Made by a program: the position numbers and the translations under genes
DNA from: Salpingoeca rosetta
Taxonomy: Eukaryota; Protista; Choanoflagellata
Assembly (NCBI GenBank): GCA_033442325.1
Contig: JAWQFM010000018.1
Coordinates: forward strand, 62,001-126,000
Direction of reading: 5' to 3'
Length of the DNA stretch: 64,000 nt
Shown here: piece by piece, positions 23,851 to 62,497 of the stretch
Position numbering within the stretch: the stretch's first letter is position 1
Layout: every line of letters begins with the position of its first letter
Notes under the pieces: generated by a model
Seen by the model: only the letters and a program-made list of their open reading frames with translations
The model's database searches: none
Told to the model about the DNA's origin: nothing

Positions 23851-24745
23851 NNNNNNNNNNNNNNNNNNNNNNNNNNNNNNNNNNNNNNNNNNNNNNNNNN
23901 NNNNNNNNNNNNNNNNNNNNNNNNNNNNNNNNNNNNNNNNNNNNNNNNNNNNNNNNNNNNNNNNNNNNNNNNNNNNNNNNNNNNNNNNNNNNNNNNNNNN
24001 NNNNNNNNNNNNNNNNNNNNNNNNNNNNNNNNNNNNNNNNNNNNNNNNNNNNNNNNNNNNNNNNNNNNNNNNNNNNNNNNNNNNNNNNNNNNNNNNNNNN
24101 NNNNNNNNNNNNNNNNNNNNNNNNNNNNNNNNNNNNNNNNNNNNNNNNNNNNNNNNNNNNNNNNNNNNNNNNNNNNNNNNNNNNNNNNNNNNNNNNNNNN
24201 NNNNNNNNNNNNNNNNNNNNNNNNNNNNNNNNNNNNNNNNNNNNNNNNNNNNNNNNNNNNNNNNNNNNNNNNNNNNNNNNNNNNNNNNNNNNNNNNNNNN
24301 NNNNNNNNNNNNNNNNNNNNNNNNNNNNNNNNNNNNNNNNNNNNNNNNNNNNNNNNNNNNNNNNNNNNNNNNNNNNNNNNNNNNNNNNNNNNNNNNNNNN
24401 NNNNNNNNNNNNNNNNNNNNNNNNNNNNNNNNNNNNNNNNNNNNNNNNNNNNNNNNNNNNNNNNNNNNNNNNNNNNNNNNNNNNNNNNNNNNNNNNNNNN
24501 NNNNNNNNNNNNNNNNNNNNNNNNNNNNNNNNNNNNNNNNNNNNNNNNNNNNNNNNNNNNNNNNNNNNNNNNNNNNNNNNNNNNNNNNNNNNNNNNNNNN
24601 NNNNNNNNNNNNNNNNNNNNNNNNNNNNNNNNNNNNNNNNNNNNNNNNNNNNNNNNNNNNNNNNNNNNNNNNNNNNNNNNNNNNNNNNNNNNNNNNNNNN
24701 NNNNNNNNNNNNNNNNNNNNNNNNNNNNNNNNNNNNNNNNNNNNN
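23851..24745. other. Assembly gap (895 N)
   Basis: Run of n directly after a (CA)n tract. Confidence 1.
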
Positions 24746-25412
24746 TCTGACGATCGCCTGGGCAGATCCAGCTACGCTACGGGTACGTGCGTCATTTAGT
24801 TGATATCGTAAACGAGCTACGTCAGTACGGGTCAGTCTCAGTCGGCATCGATCATGTTGTGATCGTGCACGTGACAGCATGCAGTACGCATCGTCGACTG
24901 CCCTGCAATTCATGCTGCATGTCTAGTCAGTCTGACGGCTACGTAGCTTGCTCCAATGCTCAGTCTCTGCCCACTTCACCTTTTCCGTGTCATCATCTCA
25001 GTATGGCTGCACACACTCGCCCCCCCCAGCATGTCGCTAACATTCTAGCCTCCTAGCTCATGCGCTGTGTTAGTCTTTCTACGTTCCTCATCTTGTGATG
25101 ACAGATTATTTTACATCGGAGAGCCCTCCTTCACATGGACTCTTCTGTCGCGAGTTAGTAGAGGGTAGCAACTCCTACGCCGGACCCCCCGCAACGGGCA
25201 TGCATGTCAGACTCCGCCTACTTATACAAATGACAACCACAGTCGCAGAGAGTATGTGCTCAGGCATTTTTTCTGTTAAATCGTCTAGTTTCTTCTCTCT
25301 CCCCTTCCTTTTTTGTACTTATTAGCTTCTTCGGCAGTGATGACTGGAGTTGTTCATGGGTAGTTGGTTCGTGATTCAGGGGGTGGTGCTCCTTTGGTTT
25401 CGCACACACGGT

Positions 25413-25493
<81 letters not shown>

Positions 25494-26224
25494 CGCCGAT
25501 AACCACCACCACCACCACCTCACCTTCCCTCCTCCCTCTTGTTGCATGGTGAGCAGGGTACCGCCTGAAGGCGTTTATCAGCCACGACATAACGGAGGCG
25601 CTTTTCTTCGCTGCAAACTGCAATCGAGCATGGATAATGGCGATTGTTGGGTATCTTTCACACACTTTCAGCACCTGCGACGTCGGAGATCTCCCGATTT
25701 GATTGGAGGAAGGATCAAGCGAGTGGAGCACACAGCCCAGCCACGGTGCGTTGGTGCGTTGGTGGTGCTGTGCTTGACGTGCGCGACTTGCGTGTGGCAG
25801 TGGGTGCTGACGTGCCTTGATGGTTTGCGCCAACCCAGCCAGCCCCCTACGCAACGTCACCGAACAACCACGGGATGTGTGACACGGACAGAAAGGCTCT
25901 TCATTTCAAACGCCCGAGCCATCCCCGACGTTGCCTCACCCACACAAACACACACACACACACACATCTGGCTTGGATTCGGTTGGCAGAACTACTGTTG
26001 CGCCCTGAGCCGCAAGTGTTCTTCTGCTTTCTTCTATGCTCTATTGCCGGCGACGTCGCAGCCTTGTTGTTGTTGTTGCACTTGTTGCTGTTGCTGTGGC
26101 CGTGCTGTCATTTCTCCTGGTTGCTGTCCTCTTCTCTCAGTCCCCTGCTTGGTACCACACTACCCCTCCTGAATCGCCGCATCGTCTCGGTCTCTCCTCA
26201 TCCCTTCCCACACCTTCTGCCACA

Positions 26225-26283
26225 ATGACCGTCAACGGCACGGTGAGTGTCTGTCTGTGTGCCTGTTTGCGTGCGAGCACCTG

Positions 26284-26314
<31 letters not shown>

Positions 26315-26997
26315 CTGTCTGTGTGTGTGAGCACCTGTCTATGTGTGTGTGTGTGTGTGTGCTTCAGCACGTGTGTGGATGCATCCATCTGTGCTTGTGT
26401 CTCTGCATCAGTACGCGCTTGATTCCATGCCTCGCTGTGATCCTTGGCTGTGTGCTGCTTGATAACGTGACATTGTGTTGCGCGTGTGTGCTGTGCTTGC
26501 AGGAGATGATGATGATGCCAATGTATTTCATGCTTGGCCACAAGACCACCATCTTGTTCAAAGACTGGGAAACAAAGACCATGGGCCGTAAGTCATGGTG
26601 TGCATGTGTCTGCGTGCGTCTGCGTGCGTGTGTATGTATGTCTATCTGTCTGTGTGTGTATGTATGTGTGTGTGTTCTGCTTTCTTGTGTGTCTGTCTGT
26701 TCGCCATGGTGTATGCAGTGTGCCTTGCCCTGTATCCCTCCTCCCTCTCCAAAGGCTTCACTGGCCACCTCACCCCCAGTGTGCGTTCCCTTGCTTCCCT
26801 TGTGCAGAGTACGTTGGCTCGTGCGTTGGGGTGCTCATCCTCGCTATCATCTATGAGTGGGGCAAGATCCTCCGTGCTGATCTTGACATGTGGATCTCCC
26901 GTCGCATCGCACCAAAGCCCTGCTGCATGAGCCTCATCAACAGCAGTACCCACCAGCCCAACAGCCACCACTCCCCTCCCGCCGCTCCAGAGTACGT

Positions 26998-27076
<79 letters not shown>

Positions 27077-27079
27077 CTC

Positions 27080-27112
<33 letters not shown>

Positions 27113-27583
27113 GTCTGTCTGTCTGCCTGTCTGTCTGCCTGTCTGTCTTCTTGCCTGTCTATCTGTCTGTCTTGAGTTTGTCAATCTCTTGACCAACCGC
27201 TCTCCTTATCTACCTGTGGCCCCATCTGCCTGCCTGTTCGTCTGCCTCCACCTCCTACACCTCCTACACCTCCGCCTCCGCTGTCCCATTCCCCACATCC
27301 TGCTCACGATGCACCTCGCTCCTCCACCCCCCCCCCTCCCGTCCAACCCCCGGCTCTGTCCGCAACCTGCAGCTGCGTGCCGTGGCACTACCAACTGCTG
27401 CGAACCGTGTGCCACATTGTCCACTTTACGCTCGCCTACTTCCTGATGCTGATTGCCATGACCTACTCCGTGGGGCTCTTCGTGTCCATGGTACTGGGTA
27501 GCGGCGTCGGTTACTTCCTCTTCATGCGCAGAAACATCTGCAAGGCGCAAGACAATGTCGAGACTGTCAGCTCGTGCCACTGA
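26225..27583 (+). CDS. SLC31A1: Ctr-family (SLC31) copper transporter
   Basis: Four exons: MTVNGT|EMMMMPMYF...ILFKDW; TM1 [12 protein letters not shown]; TM2 [12 protein letters not shown] (MxxxM); TM3 [11 protein letters not shown] (GxxxG); C-terminal SSCH*. Confidence 0.93.
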
Positions 27584-28217
27584 TCCCCGCCCCCCCCCCC
27601 TGCGTCTCGTGGGTGGTTGGTGGTGCGTGCAGTGTGGCGGGGATTGAGGTCATGTGTCTCAACCAACAACAACTCTCCATTTCATTGCCTCGCTCATCTG
27701 TTTTGTTTGTGTTAGCTGGCTGTTTGACCGCCTTTAGTTCACCTACCTACCCTCGTCAAAGGGATTTGTGTGTGTGTGTGTCTGTATATGTCTGTGTGTG
27801 TGTGTGTGTGTCTGTGTGTGTGTGTGTGTGTGTCTGTGTCTGTGTATGTGTCTGTGGTTGTGTCTCGCTCTGTCTGTCTTTCTGTGTCACCTCAGTTTTG
27901 TTCTGGATTTCATTAATTGACATGAAGTTGATAACCTTACTGCTTCCACCAATTCCCCTTGCTCCCTTCATTTCCTTCTCATTAGTTGCTGCTTGCACGG
28001 GCTGTTGGCAGCGATTACAGTCTGCTTTGTGTGCTTGGTCGGTGTTGTCGTTTAATTGCTGCGTGTTGGTTACGTGGTCTCGTCGCTTCCACGAATACAC
28101 AAGCACGCTGGATGGGCGGGTATTGTTTTGAGACTGAAGAGCTTGAGCGCACTTGTGCTGCACATGCAGCACGCACACCGGAGCTCACACACAGAGCGCA
28201 TGCAATGCTGAGGCGAG

Positions 28218-28284
28218 TTACTTGGTCTCCTTGAAGCTTGTCTCCTGCCAGGGGAAGAAGAGTGACGCGTGTCACGTGAAGAAG

Positions 28285-28328
<44 letters not shown>

Positions 28329-28887
28329 GTGTGTGTGAACGAGAGTGTGTGCGAGGAGAGAGAGAGTGTGTGTGTGTGTGTGTGTGCGTGTACGTGTGAC
28401 AAAGGCAAGTGTGAATCGTAAGCAACCCACACAGACTGATCTGCACGGCAATTCTCATATATGCAAGTCCATCTGTACACATCCGCCAATACAAACACAC
28501 ATACATACAAGCACACGCACACGCACTCGCATACACACACACGCACCTTGCCGGTCTTCTTGATTTGCTCAAGGACGGCATCTGAGGAAAGGGAGGTGAC
28601 AACGGTGACCGTCTGTCCAGCCATGTCGATGGAGATGTCCTCAACCTCTGTTGACGATGCCCATTGCATCACACACACGACACCGGTTAGTTCGTTGGTG
28701 AGCGATGAGCACCCCTCTGCTCTCTGATGCACACACGCACACACGCACACACGCACACACGCACACACGCACACACGCACACACGCACACACGCAGCGCA
28801 CATACCTGGAAGCTTCTTCAGCACCCTCTGCACGGCGCCGGAGCAGCCATCGCAGGCCATGGCAACGTTGAACACATGGGTCGGCAT
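28218..28887 (-). CDS. ATOX1: Atx1/ATOX1 copper chaperone (HMA domain)
   Basis: Three exons: MPTHVFNVAMACDGCSGAVQRVLKKLP|EVEDISIDMAGQTVTVVTSLSSDAVLEQIKKTGK|ETSFKETK*. Has the MxCxxC and KKTGK hallmarks. Confidence 0.95.
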
Positions 28888-29955
28888 GATGGATTGATCA
28901 GTCGTCGTCCACTGGAGTTCTTGCGTTGTCGACTTGATGCTTTGCTTTGCTTGCTTGCTTGTTGGTTGGTTGGAGATGTTTGTTGTTTTTTCGTGGTTGT
29001 GGAGCATTGGCGAAAGACAGCCACCAATTGTCGGCTAACACACTGCCCACAAAAAGGCAGCAAGCAAGAAGCAAGGCAGATGATGTGGATGGATGAAGGT
29101 TTGGAAGGGCGCTGACACAGTGTTTGTGCGGGAACACTTGCGACCACCAACTCTCCCCTCCCTCGCCACTGCTTCGCTTCTTGGGTTTGCTGTCTGTTCA
29201 GGAGGATCATATTGAGGGTCAGCACAACTACCGAAAGAAAAGAAAAGGAAAAAGACAAGTACAATGGTCTGCAGGGATGACAAAAGCTTTGGCGATTATG
29301 GCGAGCGAGACAAAACAAGACACCGACGACCACAAACACCAACCACCAAAGCACACCAAACGTAGACAACACGAAAGAAACACCACACGAAATGGCAACA
29401 TGCCGTCAAAGAAGGAATATCAATCACAGCCATACCAACAGCAACAAAAGAGCAGGAGCAGGAGAAGCAACATAACATAAACATAAGAATGCGCACGTCA
29501 AGAAATCAAGAAAAAGGGGAGGGGGGAGCTGCACAACAATGTGTACATCGGTACATGAACGCGAGCAACCGTACGTTGAACGGCTGTCTCGCGGGTCAAC
29601 AGCAACGCCAAGAAGCAACACAAAGAGCAACAACGTGAGGACTGGCGGGTGGAAAAAATTCCACACAGCCCATACATACGCACGAAAGAAGCCGTGATGC
29701 TGTGGGGTGAAAGAAGAGAGTGAAAACAAGGTCAACAAAAGAAAAGAAGCCTGCATGCATGGGTACAGCAAAATTAACATACGTCCACACAGTCGTGCAT
29801 TACATGCAAATCATCGATACGCACACACATCTACACACACGCACATCTACACACACAGGCGCGCACATTTACAATCTGCACGCGTGCACAATGCACACAT
29901 CCACACAACTCCACACGCATCTACGCACGCATCCAGGCACGCGCGAAGGAGGCGA

Positions 29956-30583
29956 TTAGTTGGGAGGAGGAGGAGGAGGAGCAGTGGTTGTGGGAACCGC
30001 GCCGCTGCCGTTGGCGGGAGCAACAGTCGGCACTGGCCGCGGCACACCAAGACCCGCACCAAGCCCGCCCTGCTGCTGTTGTTGCTGCTGCTGATGTTGC
30101 AAGAGAGCTTGTAACTGTTGTGGGTTCAAGGGAGCGCCAAAAGCACCGCCAGCCACCGCCGCAGCGTCAGCCGCAGTCGTCGTCGTGCCGGGCACATGCA
30201 GCCACTGCTGCTGCTGCTGCTGTTGGTGGTGGTGCTGTGGCTGTTGGGGTGGTGGTGGTACCACGTTGGCTGTGGTTATGGGGAGCGGGGCCTGGCCAGG
30301 GAGGCTGGAGGCCGCGGTGCTGAACATGAATGGCATGCGTGGATAGCCAAGCATCTGCGGAAACTGCTGCATACCGTATCCCGGCACCTGGGCCATGGGG
30401 CCTGCGCCAAGCATGTTCGGGAAGAACGGCGTCAGCCCACCAGGGGGCACTTGCCCATACTGCCCTTGCTGCTGCTGCGGCTGCAACTGCTGCTGTGGCA
30501 TTGCACTCATCATCTGCATCATCTGCATGTACATGTTATGCGGCTGGGGCATGCCTTCTAGCTGCTGCTGGTGTTGTTGCTGT

Positions 30584-30615
<32 letters not shown>

Positions 30616-30992
30616 TTGCTGGTGCTGCTGGTGTTGCTGCGGCACACCACCAAACCCATGCATCATCATGCCGTGCATGTGCGGGTGCATGACCTGGGCC
30701 TGGCTCAGCCCCGCCTGCATGGGGATGGACGTCGCGTGTGGGTCAAAGCCGGTGTGCTGCGGCTGCTGCTGCTGCTGCAGGTGCTGCCCATGCTTGGGCA
30801 GCTGGGCCGCTGTGGCCTTGGCGGTACGGTCCATACAGTGCTTCTCCATGTGCATGGTGAGCGACGACTTTTGGGTGAACCGTGTCCCGCACACCTCGCA
30901 CTTATACGGGCGCTCCTTCGTGTGCACCCGGCTGTGTCGGACAAGCTGTACCAGAGTCAAACGGACATGCAAAAGTATGTGAGTGTGAGTAT

Positions 30993-31030
<38 letters not shown>

Positions 31031-31293
31031 CTGTAGCCATGAACATGTCAGCAAGGGCACCATGTACACTTCCCTCACATCATCCCACAGCACAATGCAA
31101 CCTCCAGGCTGCAATATCATGTGCACACACACGCATGCACGCACACAGACGGACAAACGCACCTTGCTCTGGCTTGGGAATTCCTTCTTGCAATGCAGAC
31201 AGCGGTGTGTTTTCTACACAGTGGGGCACCAACACGGATGAGAAAAAGGCGAGCAAGCGGTGATTCGGCGGAAAAGCAGGACATTGACCTTCA

Positions 31294-31343
<50 letters not shown>

Positions 31344-33114
31344 CACACATTACGCACAATCACACACGCACGAAAACGTGTGTACTCACGAGGGCGCGTT
31401 CGTCGGAGTAGACGATGGTGTGGCCGACGAGGATGGTCATGCCAGACTCCACGCTCTGCACTGTCACGGGGATCTTCTTCACCATCACCATCCCGCGCTG
31501 CATCTCTTGCTCTTCCTCTTCCTCTTCCTCCTCGGCAACAGCACCTGCAGCTTGCGCGTACATTTGCTTCTGCTGCGTCTGCTGCTGCTGCTGGTGTTGT
31601 GCTGGTTGGAGGGCCGCGTGCGCCACGTGCGCGGTTGAGACGGTGCCGGGTTGCAGCCCCTGCTGCGGCTGTGGCAGCAAGTCTGCAGACGAGCTCCGCC
31701 CTTGCTTGGACAGGAACGCGTGCTGCAGCTTACTGCTGGGCGCGTGCGGGTCCACAAACTCTGCCTTTGCCTTCTTGGGGGTGTGGCCACCATCATCAGC
31801 GCGGCGCTTCAGCGTGTCTGTCTTCATCTTTGGGGCCTGGCCCGGCTGGCTGACATGCTCGGGCTCCACGCTGGCTTCGGTCTTGACAGCAACTTGTTTC
31901 AGCACGCGCGCGGTGTCCCGTTGTGTGTGCGCCTGTGCGCGTGTGCCACGGGTGTGCCTGTGACCGCGGTTGCGACCGGCACTGCTTGAGCCAGACGAGG
32001 AGGAGGAGGAGGAGGAGGAGTCACTGTCATCGTCGTCGTCTTCATCGTCTTGGTCGTCAACACGGCGGTGAACTGCTGTTGCTGCTGTCGTCGCTGCTGT
32101 CGGTGGTGCTGTTGCGGCAGCTTGTGTGACGCTTGCTGCGGGCGCCTCTGCCTCTGGAGCAGGCACCATCTCGTCACGGCTGGCCGTACCCCCGCTGACG
32201 CTGACGCTGGCAAAGCTGGCCCGGCGGTCCGCTGCCAGGGTGCCGAGTCGCTCGCGCAGGAGTGCCCTCTGCTCCTCCTCGCTCATGTCCTCCGTGGGCT
32301 CGTAGTCTGCATCGCCCTCCTCCGCTTCATGCTGCTCATGCTGCTGCTCCTGCTGCGGTGCGTGAACGCCGATGGCGGGCGGCGCGGCGCTGTCCGTGGC
32401 ATTACCACTGGTGCCGTTGGAAGCCTTGCTTGGGGACCGCACGGTCGCTGCTGTGGTGGTGACCCCAGCCTCCTTGCTGTTGCTGTCGTTGTCGGACTTG
32501 GCGGCTGCGGCTGCGCGCACCACGGCGGTGGTGCGAATGGCGGAAGTGATCGCACTGGCAGCAGCATCGTCGGCGACGTCACTGGTGCGGCCATGTGCGC
32601 CGAGGCGGTCACGGGCGCGGCTGTTGGGGCCGGGCTGGCCGTTGTGGCCCGGTGATGTGCAAGCGCTGATGTAGCCGCCACCGCCTCGAGACAAAGGGGT
32701 GTGGCGCCCTGTGTTCGCGTCCTGGGCGCCCAAACTGCCGATGGCGTGCGTGGTGGTGCTGGTTCCTGGGATGTCGTCGCAGCCATCGCAGGCCGGCTGT
32801 GCCTGTGTGCGACTGCGCATGGACACGCCGTGAAATGCCTTCAGGCCGGGCTGTGCACAGGAGGTGTGGCATTGAGCTGCGCGGATCGAGGCTGCAAGAG
32901 CCTGGCGTCGCGGGGCACTGGCAATGTCGCGCATGGCAGTGCTGACGGTGCTGACGGTGTTGTTGCCAGTGGTGTTGCTGCAGTCGTGACGAAGCAGGCG
33001 GAGCAGTGGTTTGGCGTGTCTTCGAGATCGTGGAGAACGCAGTGCCTGTGCTTGTGCCTGTGCTTGTGAATAGGGGAAATTGCTTGATGGCTCTTCTGAG
33101 GGGAGCTGGTCCAT
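29956..33114 (-). CDS. C2H2 zinc-finger transcription factor (2 fingers) with long disordered N-terminus and Q/M/P-rich C-terminus
   Basis: Exons ~31390-33114, 31163-31213, 29956-30945 join in phase: ...ERAL|KTHRCLHCKKEFPSQSK|LVRHSRVHTKERPYKCEVCGTRFTQKSSLTMHMEKH, with a Kruppel-type linker HTKERPY. The start codon is uncertain. Confidence 0.85.
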
Positions 33115-60269: not shown

Positions 60270-62497
60270 TGTCTGTCTGTCTGTCTGTCTGCCTGCCTGC
60301 CTGCCTGTCTGTCTGTCTGCCTGCCTGCCTGCATCATGTGCTTCTGTGCCTGTGCTTCTGATGTAAATGTGTACTGTTGTCTCGCTGTGCCCGTGGGTTT
60401 TTGCTTGCATACCACGTGTCTCCCCCCCCCCCAACACACACCGACCCTCCCACACCCACGTACTCCTCCCACACCTCTGGCGTGCCACCAGGCGCTGCAG
60501 CTGCAGGTGCATGAGCGGCTGTACAGTGACGTTGCCAAGTGCTGCAGAGCAACCCTCCTTCCCTCCACAGCACACGGCGCTGGGGATGCTGGCGCCTGGC
60601 TCACACCCTCCGTCCCATCCCCTTTCCAGGTGTGTGTTTGTGTGGGGGGGGGGATGTGTATGTGCGCGTGTGTGAGGGTGTGTGGGTGCGTGTATGTGTG
60701 TGCCGGCATCAGCAACGCGTTGTGTCTTGTTTCGCGCATCCCCGCCCTGCATCATTGCCTCAATTCACGCATCCATGTGTGTGTGTGCGTGTTTATGTGT
60801 GCAGGAGGTGCCGGCTGCGGCCATCTCCACGGGGATCAACATCTCCGACCACGACAGCATATTCCAGGGCCTCAAAACACACTTCACAAAGGTGCCTACG
60901 CTACCGGATCCTGCAAATTAGCCACCCGCTTCATGCTAGTGTGATCTTCTCTTCCTCTCCTCCCCCTTCCTCCGCCTCACACAACACAACACAACACAAC
61001 ACAACACAACGCGCTCGCACACGCACGTGCAGGAACTGTCGCCCCACTTTGCTGTGCTCAAAGCGCGCGACTGCAAAGGAATGGCGGGAATCATGAAGAC
61101 GCTGGTCTGTCCTTTCGCACCACCAGTCTTTGCGTTGGCGCATCCGCTGCTAGCTCTGCTTTGCCTCCATTGACAAGTGCTGCCACCGCTGTTCCCCGTG
61201 CTCACCGCTTGACCATCATTCTCATCATTATCACTACGTTCACAACCATCCCTCCTCTCCCCACCTGCTACCACACAAACACACAAACACACACACACAC
61301 CGACTATCAGGTGCGCTCGCTGCTCGATATTGGCTCGGTCCACAGCACCCTCCCGCTCAGCCGCCTGCCCACATACGACTTTCAGGTCAGACAAGCGCGT
61401 GCGGCGTGTGCATGTTGTGTTTTCTCGTGAACAATTGCGCATAACCTACCTCCCCCCCCCAACCCTTTCCTTTGCTAACACACGTTTGCTGCGCATCACA
61501 CGCCGGCTTCCCCGTCACACGCCCTTCTCCTCATCATTCCCCATCTGTCCTCTCCTGCACCTCCACCACCACCACGACCGCCAGGTGCTGCGCGGGTGGT
61601 ACGAGAGCCTGTATCCCTCGCGCGACATTCGCCCGCCACTTGTCATCGCCTTTCAGGACTTTGAGGCCTTTGATCCAATGGTTCGATGATACCAATGAAG
61701 AAGGGGGGGGAGGCGATGCCGAAGTGGCGTTCTGCACATGCGTGTGTGCATACGCCTGATGTGGACGTGTGAATGCCTGGAGCATGCACGCATGCATGCG
61801 TGTCGGCGTAAATTAGCGCCAGCACATGTGCATACACACACATATATACACGCACGCATGCGCACCATCACGCACACACGCACGCGCTGACACGATGGCG
61901 CCCGTGTACTTGTTTGCAGGGGCTTGCGGATTTTGTGTGCGTGTGCAGTCACTATCGACAGTCTCTGCCGATTTTTCTCGTGTTTGGGGTGGCGTCCGGC
62001 CCATCCGTGCTCGCAAGGTGCTGCACTTGTACTTGCTCGCTTGCACACGCATTGGCTGATGCTCGTGCTTCCATGCACTCTGTGCGCTCCCTCACTCGCT
62101 CGCACCATCACAAAACTTGCGGTCACTTCCCCTCTCCTCTCCAACCTCCTCTCCCACCCTCACACAATACACTTCTCCTCTCCCACCCTCACAATACACT
62201 TCTCCTCTCCCACCCTCACAATACACTTCTCCTCTCCTCTCCCACCCTCACACAACACACTTCCCCTCTCCCACCTCCCCCCCCCCCTTTCAAGGTACCT
62301 GCCTCGGCGGGCGATGAGCCAGCTGAACGTGCGGCGGTACCGGGTGCAGGCGTCGACGGTTGTGCTACATACCGTCGCCACAGACATCATCATGGACCCG
62401 GCCCTCCCGGCAAAGCTCGGCCCAAGGTCCGCCGCCTGTCCTGTTTATGGCATCTGCCTTTTGTTGTCTTGGCCGCGCTGCCTTCTTTCCCTGCTTT

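What the first reader, a model, noticed from the sequence alone, without database searches (positions are those of the whole stretch)
26225..33114. Candidate three-gene copper-homeostasis module: Ctr importer, Atx1 chaperone and a C2H2 regulator
Seen: the Ctr importer and the Atx1 chaperone are immediate convergent neighbours (stop codons ~630 bp apart). The next gene is a C2H2 factor carrying Cys- and Met/His-rich motifs. Established: Ctr hands Cu(I) to Atx1 through its C-terminal Cys/His tail, and the two genes are unlinked in humans and budding yeast. Inference: this is a functional cluster, possibly with its own copper sensor, in a lineage where I know of no described copper-responsive transcription factor.
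Basis: partly seen in the sequence, partly recalled or inferred. Interest (0 to 1): 0.8.

Follow-up and report, generated by a model that had tools for sequence, protein, structure and literature searches.

The report
Linked copper importer and chaperone genes
In the choanoflagellate Salpingoeca rosetta the copper importer gene (Ctr) and the gene for its copper chaperone (Atx1) sit tail to tail, and one other related genome keeps the same arrangement, but nothing ties the neighbouring zinc-finger gene to copper.

Summary
The window is Salpingoeca rosetta (GL832971.1).

- **Ctr importer:** 4 exons on the + strand, 165 aa.
- **Atx1/ATOX1 chaperone:** 3 exons on the - strand, 69 aa. The two genes are convergent, with stop codons 635 bp apart.
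- **Next gene:** a 921-aa protein with two classical C2H2 fingers.

A 4.5-kb contig from an unidentified relative (run SRR21707646) carries a Ctr gene (39% identical, same intron phases) and an Atx1 gene in the same convergent layout. Both flanks of that contig are unrelated to the S. rosetta flanks. A second, diverged contig from the same run repeats the pair. Two sponge genomes and 43 metagenome Ctr loci show no Atx1 next to Ctr. An oomycete gene model fuses Ctr and HMA domains.

The zinc-finger gene is not next to Atx1 in the relative. It has no copper-fist, MTF-1-like or SBP features and only seven non-finger cysteines. Its Cys-bearing N-terminal part shows no confident fold and only weak coding periodicity. 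Its Met/His stretches lie inside poly-Q low-complexity sequence.

I read this as a two-gene pair of ordinary copper genes whose linkage is old. No copper-response data exist. This scan noted the same stretch twice, and not on other DNA.

The parts
26225..26242 (+). Ctr exon 1 (MTVNGT)
   Evidence: ATG followed by a GTGAGT donor. The annotated upstream start at 26036 has non-coding-like GC3 of 0.46, and choanoflagellate orthologues start directly at the M-x-M-x-F motif.
26503..26587 (+). Ctr exon 2: Met motif EMMMMPMYF and the start of TM1
   Evidence: The matching exon in L002 is also 85 nt and in the same phase.
26808..26991 (+). Ctr exon 3: TM1 and the cytosolic loop
   Evidence: Pfam Ctr, 28.9 bits.
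27373..27583 (+). Ctr exon 4: TM2 (MLIAM = MxxxM), TM3 (GSGVG = GxxxG), C-terminal SSCH, stop
   Evidence: Pfam Ctr, 56.9 bits. M121, M125, G138, G142 and C164 are invariant in the choanoflagellate alignment.
27584..28217 (.). Spacer between the two stop codons; holds both 3' UTRs and (GT)n tracts
   Evidence: Read directly from the sequence.
28218..28244 (-). Atx1 exon 3 (ETSFKETK, stop)
   Evidence: CAG acceptor, in frame.
28547..28647 (-). Atx1 exon 2: second half of the HMA fold, ending in KKTGK
   Evidence: Pfam HMA profile positions 26-61. Only PDB hit is yeast Atx1.
28806..28887 (-). Atx1 exon 1 with the copper loop M-A-C-D-G-C
   Evidence: Pfam HMA profile positions 1-24. Aligns to ATOX1 from residue 1.
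28843..28858 (-). 16-nt string that encodes the Atx1 copper loop and recurs in the ZnF gene
29956..30945 (-). ZnF exon 3: end of finger 1, finger 2, and the Q/M/H/P-rich tail
   Evidence: Pfam zf-C2H2, 27.6 bits. PDB hits are generic C2H2 arrays.
30838..31201 (-). The two C2H2 fingers (residues 580-628), with intron 2 inside finger 1
30652..30690 (-). Met/His-rich stretch MHPHMHGMMMHGF (residues 678-690)
   Evidence: It is flanked by poly-Q.
30496..30540 (-). Met-rich stretch HNMYMQMMQMMSAMP (residues 728-742)
31163..31213 (-). ZnF exon 2 (17 codons, first half of finger 1)
31390..33114 (-). ZnF exon 1 (575 codons), low complexity, holds the six N-terminal Cys
   Evidence: No stop codon for 575 codons. 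No Pfam domain. AF2 pLDDT of 37 for residues 1-200. Weak codon periodicity for residues 1-400.
32779..32794 (-). Second copy of the 16-nt string; encodes A-C-D-G-C at ZnF residues 108-112

Best explanation
This is a two-gene copper-uptake pair, not a three-gene module. The Ctr trimer imports Cu(I). Its cytosolic tail, which ends in Cys-His, passes the ion to the single-domain chaperone Atx1 through the M-x-C-x-x-C loop. Atx1 then carries it to a P-type ATPase; no such ATPase is annotated within about 10 kb on either side of Ctr. That pathway is inferred from the family features, which are all present. What is shown here is that the two genes lie tail to tail 635 bp apart and that the same layout survives in at least one other diverged, choanoflagellate-like genome whose flanks differ. 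I infer that the linkage is old and is probably favoured because the two partners are needed together, for example through a shared chromatin neighbourhood or coupled 3' ends. The upstream two-finger C2H2 gene is most likely an ordinary transcription factor with long disordered Q-rich regions that happens to lie next door.
For: Gene identities: Pfam Ctr on two exons and HMA on both Atx1 exons; best PDB matches are Atx1 and ATOX1; MxxxM, GxxxG and the C-terminal Cys are invariant among choanoflagellate Ctr proteins. GC3 is 0.80 for Ctr and 0.77 for Atx1. Conserved pair: L002 holds Ctr (+, 173 aa, 39% identity, two introns at the same places and phases) and Atx1 (-; exon 1 is 74% and exon 2 is 53% identical), and the two genes are convergent. 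L046 repeats the layout. Outside Ctr and Atx1, L002 matched no coding stretch of the 64-kb window, apart from one stray 13-residue match from window 61674-61769 on its left flank. Functional coupling elsewhere: the Lagenidium giganteum model DAZ98371.1 carries Ctr and HMA domains in one polypeptide. Hand-off chemistry: PMC4805863. ZnF as a bystander: it is absent beside Atx1 in L002; it has only two fingers and no copper-fist or other metal-sensor domain at E <= 1; its N-terminal part has no confident fold.
Against: Only one other lineage shows the pair. Its organism is unidentified, and its two contigs come from one run, so they are not independent. S. rosetta and Monosiga brevicollis share measurable microsynteny in general (PMC5560861), so a retained neighbour pair need not mean selection. 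Convergent genes share no promoter, and no common promoter word was found. No co-expression or copper-response data exist. I could not find a Monosiga Ctr to test. The L002 flanks are short: 1.3 kb on the Ctr side and 1.4 kb on the Atx1 side.
Confidence: 0.5

Rival explanations
1. Neutral leftover. Ctr and Atx1 became neighbours by chance in a choanoflagellate ancestor and simply have not yet been separated. The adjacency has no functional meaning.
For: Choanoflagellate genomes keep some microsynteny (PMC5560861). The pair is absent in two sponges and in 43 metagenome Ctr loci. The tail-to-tail orientation gives no shared promoter, and no shared promoter words were found. A scan of a whole genome for related neighbours will turn up some by chance.
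Against: Both flanks differ between S. rosetta and L002 while the pair, its orientation and roughly its spacing persist, at only 39% Ctr identity. The pair recurs on a second diverged contig. An independent Ctr-HMA fusion in an oomycete shows the coupling can be favoured.
Confidence: 0.35
2. The C2H2 protein senses Cu(I) through its N-terminal CxxxC/CxxC cysteines, which include an Atx1-like A-C-D-G-C loop, or through its Met/His stretches, and it regulates Ctr and Atx1.
For: The gene lies directly upstream of Atx1. A 16-nt string encoding A-C-D-G-C is shared, in frame, with the Atx1 copper loop. Only 2 of 3000 codon shuffles reach that length, and it is the longest match of the Atx1 CDS in the window. 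MHPHMHGMMMH resembles Ctr ectodomain motifs. I found no paper describing a copper-responsive factor in choanoflagellates.
Against: The gene is not linked to Atx1 in L002. The similarity stops at the 16 nt, so there is no duplicated domain. There are only six scattered N-terminal Cys, against the dense clusters of Ace1, Mac1 or Drosophila MTF-1 (my own knowledge). The Cys region has pLDDT 37 and weak codon periodicity. Met-thioether sites bind Cu(I) too weakly to sense cytosolic copper (my own knowledge). No Pfam metal-sensor domain was found. No shared promoter words were found.
Confidence: 0.06
3. Coupling through the 3' ends. The convergent layout matters because the two transcripts overlap or terminate against each other in the 635-bp spacer, giving reciprocal (antisense) control of importer and chaperone.
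For: The orientation is conserved in L002 and L046, and the spacing looks similar: the gap from the Ctr stop to the end of Atx1 exon 2 is 582 bp in L002 (1981 to 2564) and about 440 bp in L046, although the last Atx1 exon was not located in either contig. L002 and L046 share a 29-nt identical block inside the spacer.
Against: Transcript ends are unknown because no reads were laid. The 29-nt block is shared only between two contigs of one run.
Confidence: 0.08

Closest known systems
Human CTR1 (SLC31A1) / yeast Ctr1 with ATOX1 / Atx1: the Cu(I) importer-to-chaperone hand-off
   Same: The family motifs are the same: a Met motif before TM1, MxxxM in TM2, GxxxG in TM3 and a Cys-His C-terminus in Ctr; MxCxxC and KKTGK in a roughly 70-aa single HMA domain in Atx1. 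Transfer from the Ctr1 tail to Atox1 has been shown for the human proteins (PMC4805863).
   Different: The ectodomain is very short here (about 14 residues before the Met motif ends). The two genes are immediate convergent neighbours. In humans (9q32 and 5q33) and in yeast (chromosomes XVI and XIV) they are unlinked; this is from my own knowledge and was not tested here.
Ctr-HMA fusion protein of the oomycete Lagenidium giganteum (DAZ98371.1)
   Same: It couples the same two domains, Ctr followed by a GMxCxxC HMA domain.
   Different: There the coupling is a fusion within one polypeptide, in a gene model that may merge tandem copies. Here there are two separate genes on opposite strands.
Bacterial copZ-copA / cop operons (chaperone gene next to a copper transporter gene)
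   Same: An HMA chaperone gene is linked to a copper transporter gene.
   Different: Those are co-transcribed operons with an efflux ATPase and a dedicated repressor (CopY or CsoR). Here an importer is paired with the chaperone, the genes are transcribed convergently, and no regulator has been shown.
Known eukaryotic copper-responsive factors: Ace1/Mac1/Cuf1 (copper fist), MTF-1 (six C2H2 fingers plus a Cys cluster), CRR1/SPL7 (SBP domain)
   Same: Like MTF-1, the neighbouring protein uses C2H2 fingers and has some cysteines outside them.
   Different: It has two fingers, not six. It has no copper-fist or SBP domain and no dense Cys cluster.

Membership tests
Ctr / SLC31 copper transporter (PF04145) | Profile match above the curated cut-off | tested here: met
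   Exon 3 scores 28.9 bits and exon 4 scores 56.9 bits against a cut-off of 25.3. The annotated protein P0001 carries PF04145.
Ctr / SLC31 copper transporter (PF04145) | MxxxM in TM2 and GxxxG in TM3 | tested here: met
   MLIAM and GSGVG are present. M121, M125, G138 and G142 are invariant in seven choanoflagellate sequences.
Ctr / SLC31 copper transporter (PF04145) | Met motif just before TM1 and a cytosolic Cys/His tail | tested here: met
   EMMMMPMYF at the N-terminus and SSCH at the C-terminus. C164 is invariant.
Ctr / SLC31 copper transporter (PF04145) | Cu(I) uptake activity | not testable with these tools
   Needs complementation of a yeast ctr1 ctr3 mutant or a 64Cu uptake assay.
Atx1 / ATOX1 copper chaperone (single HMA domain, PF00403) | HMA profile match | tested here: met
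   The two exons match collinear halves of the profile (positions 1-24 and 26-61 of 62) with 22.8 and 23.9 bits. Each half is just under the 24.8 cut-off on its own; together they are well above it. The spliced protein was not scanned whole.
Atx1 / ATOX1 copper chaperone (single HMA domain, PF00403) | MxCxxC copper loop | tested here: met
   M10-A-C12-D-G-C15.
Atx1 / ATOX1 copper chaperone (single HMA domain, PF00403) | Stand-alone protein of about 70 aa that is closest to Atx1/ATOX1 rather than to ATPase or CCS domains | tested here: met
   The model is 69 aa. The best PDB hits for both exons are yeast Atx1 (1cc7) and human ATOX1, aligned from residue 1.
C2H2 zinc-finger transcription factor | CX2-4CX12HX3-5H fingers with a TGEKP-type linker | tested here: met
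   Two fingers (residues 580-600 and 608-628) joined by the linker TKERPYKC.
Copper-fist factors (Ace1/Mac1/Cuf1) | N-terminal copper-fist domain and CxC/CxxC clusters | tested here: not met
   No Copper-fist hit at E <= 1. There is only one CxxxC and one CxxC.
MTF-1 | Six C2H2 fingers plus a C-terminal Cys cluster | tested here: not met
   Two fingers. No Cys after residue 629.
Conserved functional gene cluster | Linkage kept in relatives | tested here: inconclusive
   Ctr-Atx1 is kept in L002 and L046, one unidentified lineage. It is absent in two sponges and in 43 metagenome loci. ZnF is not kept in L002. Monosiga was not testable.
Conserved functional gene cluster | Co-regulation by copper | not testable with these tools

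The most novel reading that the evidence does not exclude
The C2H2 protein next to Atx1 carries its own Atx1-type A-C-D-G-C loop, encoded by the same 16 nucleotides. It receives Cu(I) from Atx1 or Ctr and tunes transcription of the adjacent importer-chaperone pair. That would be the first copper-sensing transcription factor described in the closest relatives of animals.
Probability: 0.05. Interest if true: 0.8.

Novelty: new member of a known kind. Interest (0 to 1): 0.35.

Why it matters
Ctr and Atx1 are textbook partners, and both genes here are ordinary family members. The modest new point concerns genome organisation. An importer gene and its chaperone gene are kept tail to tail in at least two diverged choanoflagellate-type genomes, and an oomycete gene model fuses the same two domains. 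If wider sampling shows the pair is kept more often than random neighbours, it would be a clean eukaryotic case of selection for linkage of two physically interacting copper proteins. It would also be a convenient handle for studying copper uptake in S. rosetta, where gene knockouts are possible. The more exciting claim, a linked copper sensor, has no support so far.

Tried and rejected
- **Word search with ZnF exon 1:** blank. Low-complexity words swamped it, and it did not even find the annotated 921-aa protein, so the blank means nothing.
- **Word search with Ctr exon 4:** found only the S. rosetta protein itself.
- **Looking for a Monosiga brevicollis Ctr** among the exhaustive and profile hits: none seen, so the planned Monosiga synteny test could not be run.
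- **Identifying the organism of SRR21707646:** paper search and a second look-up found nothing.
- **Atlas search with ZnF exon 1:** no usable hit.
- **AF2 of ZnF residues 1-200:** no confident fold. This was a single-sequence run, so the evidence is weak.
- **Shared promoter words and MRE/CuRE/GTAC counts:** nothing above chance.
- **Locus-tag literature search:** nothing.
- **Contig L050:** too short downstream of Ctr to be informative.
- **Idea that the 16-nt identity reflects a duplicated HMA domain:** rejected, because the flanking sequence on both sides does not match.
Full report
**Source and gene models.** The window is Salpingoeca rosetta, assembly GCA_000188695.1, scaffold GL832971.1. 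I read the region on both strands and built spliced models with GT..AG borders.
- Ctr: + strand, exons 26225-26242, 26503-26587, 26808-26991 and 27373-27583, 165 aa.
- Atx1: - strand, exons 28887-28806, 28647-28547 and 28244-28218, 69 aa.
- ZnF: - strand, exons 33114-31390, 31213-31163 and 30945-29956, 921 aa.

The public annotation has the same ZnF length. It starts Ctr at 26036 (228 aa, PTSG_06719) and the HMA gene at 29007 (109 aa). Three lines of evidence argue that those extensions are not coding:
- Their GC3 is 0.46 and 0.57, against 0.80 and 0.77 in the cores.
- Choanoflagellate Ctr orthologues begin directly at the M-x-M-x-F motif.
- ATOX1 aligns from residue 1 of the short Atx1 model.

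**Identity of the genes.**
- Ctr exons 3 and 4 each pass the Pfam Ctr cut-off. The protein has EMMMMPMYF before TM1, MLIAM in TM2, GSGVG in TM3 and a C-terminal SSCH. The Met, Gly and Cys positions are invariant across seven choanoflagellate sequences.
- The two larger Atx1 exons match the two halves of the HMA profile. Their best solved relatives are yeast Atx1 and human ATOX1. The MACDGC loop and the KKTGK motif are present.
- The third gene has two canonical C2H2 fingers with a TKERPYKC linker and matches only generic finger arrays in the PDB.

The stop codons of Ctr and Atx1 are 635 bp apart and the genes converge. ZnF lies upstream of Atx1 on the same strand, 1069 bp away. 'Cys-rich' is too strong, however: the ZnF protein has 11 Cys in 921 residues, and only six lie in the N-terminal part.

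**Relatives of Ctr.** An exhaustive search with the 165-aa Ctr gave 1737 hits. The closest are transcriptome proteins of Microstomoeca roanoka (52% identity), Hartaetosiga balthica, Salpingoeca infusionum and Mylnosiga fluctuans. After these come animal CTR1 and SLC31A2 proteins. Transcriptomes give no gene order. No Monosiga brevicollis Ctr turned up.

**The synteny test.**
- *First contig.* One hit was an 84-aa exon-sized fragment on a 4473-bp Logan contig of run SRR21707646 (L002). L002 carries a three-exon Ctr on the + strand (1294-1378, 1476-1644, 1714-1981; 173 aa; 39% identical to S. rosetta). Its two introns sit at the same places and phases as S. rosetta introns 2 and 3. On the - strand it carries Atx1 exon 1 (about 3051-2980, 74% identical, copper loop M-S-C-G-G-C) and exon 2 (2665-2564, 53% identical). 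The genes converge, as in S. rosetta.
- *Placement.* In a tree, the L002 Ctr groups with the choanoflagellate sequences, but weakly (77/83), and it matches none of the named species.
- *Flanks.* I compared every stop-free stretch of the 64-kb window with L002. Apart from one stray 13-residue match (window 61674-61769 against L002 711-749, far from the finding), only the Ctr and Atx1 regions matched, so both flanks differ.
- *Second contig.* Contig L046, from the same run, repeats the layout with a diverged Ctr (73% nucleotide identity to L002) and Atx1 exon 2 (90%). It has a 5-nt insertion near the Ctr C-terminus.
- *Where the pair is absent.* Two sponge genomes have tandem Ctr genes and no HMA gene within 10 kb. 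None of 43 metagenome Ctr loci, about 20 of which have at least 1.5 kb downstream, contains an Atx1-like exon.
- *A fusion elsewhere.* One hit, Lagenidium giganteum DAZ98371.1, carries Ctr and HMA domains in one polypeptide.

**How far this goes.** The pair is kept in one other lineage at deep divergence while its surroundings changed. That fits selection for linkage. But S. rosetta and Monosiga share some microsynteny in general (PMC5560861). The second lineage is unidentified, and its two contigs are not independent. Convergent genes cannot share a promoter, and no 7- to 9-mer is shared by the four promoters of the two species. I put about 0.5 on an old and probably favoured two-gene pair, and about 0.35 on neutral retention.

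**The zinc-finger gene.**
- In L002 the 1.4 kb upstream of Atx1 holds a 388-codon + strand ORF with no significant Pfam match. No C2H2 pattern occurs there; the one regex match on the contig lies in the spacer between Ctr and Atx1.
- The S. rosetta protein has no Pfam domain besides the fingers, and no copper-fist or SBP domain.
- No look-alike was found in the Atlas.
- AF2 gives no confident fold for residues 1-200 (pLDDT 37; single sequence, so weak evidence).
- Residues 1-400 show weak codon periodicity (GC1/2/3 near 0.65/0.62/0.68), whereas residues 401-921 look normally coding. The 575-codon open frame is still far beyond chance.
- The Met/His stretches (678-690 and 728-742) sit within poly-Q sequence. 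From my own knowledge, thioether sites bind Cu(I) too weakly to report cytosolic copper.

**The 16-nt repeat.** One oddity, noted by another reader (s1-435387), is real. The 16 nt encoding the Atx1 copper loop (28858-28843) recur in frame at ZnF residues 108-112 (32794-32779). Only 2 of 3000 codon shuffles reach that length, and it is the longest match of the Atx1 CDS anywhere in the window. The similarity ends at those 16 nt, so it is not a duplicated domain. I keep the copper-sensor reading at about 5-6%.

**Expression.** These places lie in the spacer between the ZnF stop and the Atx1 start. Three local scripts did include them: one search translated the whole window and compared it with L002 by a local tblastn, rescanned that same translation file for Met-rich stretches, and one search matched the Atx1 CDS against the rest of the window. 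Nothing matched in those places in any of the three. The only indirect sign of transcription comes from several runs guessed to be RNA. They have transcriptome-sized contig sets and hold 0.46-0.55 of the words of the Ctr-Atx1 stretch, as spliced transcripts would, whereas genome-sized runs hold about 0.9. No paper mentions these loci or copper regulation in choanoflagellates. The Ctr1-to-Atox1 hand-off itself is documented for the human proteins (PMC4805863).

**Verdict.** These are ordinary Ctr and Atx1 genes in an unusual and apparently old tail-to-tail linkage. The neighbouring C2H2 gene is unsupported as part of the system. The scan noted this same stretch twice; it was not found before on other DNA.

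Noticed in passing
P0083 / L048:6001-11008 (Lagenidium giganteum NSDO01000177.1): An oomycete gene model carries Ctr domains, each followed after TM3 by a GMxCxxC HMA domain, so importer and chaperone domain are fused in one protein. The 1150-aa model looks like merged tandem copies, and another Ctr gene lies next to it.
   Followed up: partly
window 26036-26224 and 28888-29007: The public annotation starts PTSG_06719 (228 aa) and the HMA gene (109 aa) at upstream ATGs. These extensions have non-coding-like GC3 (0.46 and 0.57), are absent from orthologues, and are not matched by ATOX1, so the true proteins are probably 165 and 69 aa.
   Followed up: yes
window 28843-28858 and 32779-32794: The 16-nt string GGCCTGCGATGGCTGC encodes (A)CDGC both in the Atx1 copper loop and in the ZnF N-terminal region. 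About 7 in 10,000 codon shuffles reach that length. The flanks do not match.
   Followed up: partly
L046:505-610 compared with L002:1890-1990: The second Ctr copy from run SRR21707646 has a 5-nt insertion that shifts the frame before the C-terminal Cys-His, although the old ...ACH-stop codons are still readable downstream. It is either a decaying duplicate or an assembly error.
   Followed up: partly
L002:2452-2480 and L046:928-956: A 29-nt block, 100% identical, lies in the spacer between the convergent Ctr and Atx1 genes of the two contigs. It could be a conserved 3' UTR element.
   Followed up: no
window 23900-24750: An assembly gap (run of N) sits inside the upstream ubiquitin-protease gene (zf-UBP, UCH, UBA).
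   Followed up: no
window 26260-28800 and elsewhere: Nearly every intron and UTR of these genes holds long (GT)n/(CA)n or (CTGT)n microsatellites.
   Followed up: no
P0005 / P0152 (Mylnosiga fluctuans transcripts): A Ctr domain sits at the C-terminus of a 463-485-aa ORF whose first 295 residues have no Pfam match. This may be a transcript-assembly artefact or a long ectodomain.
   Followed up: partly
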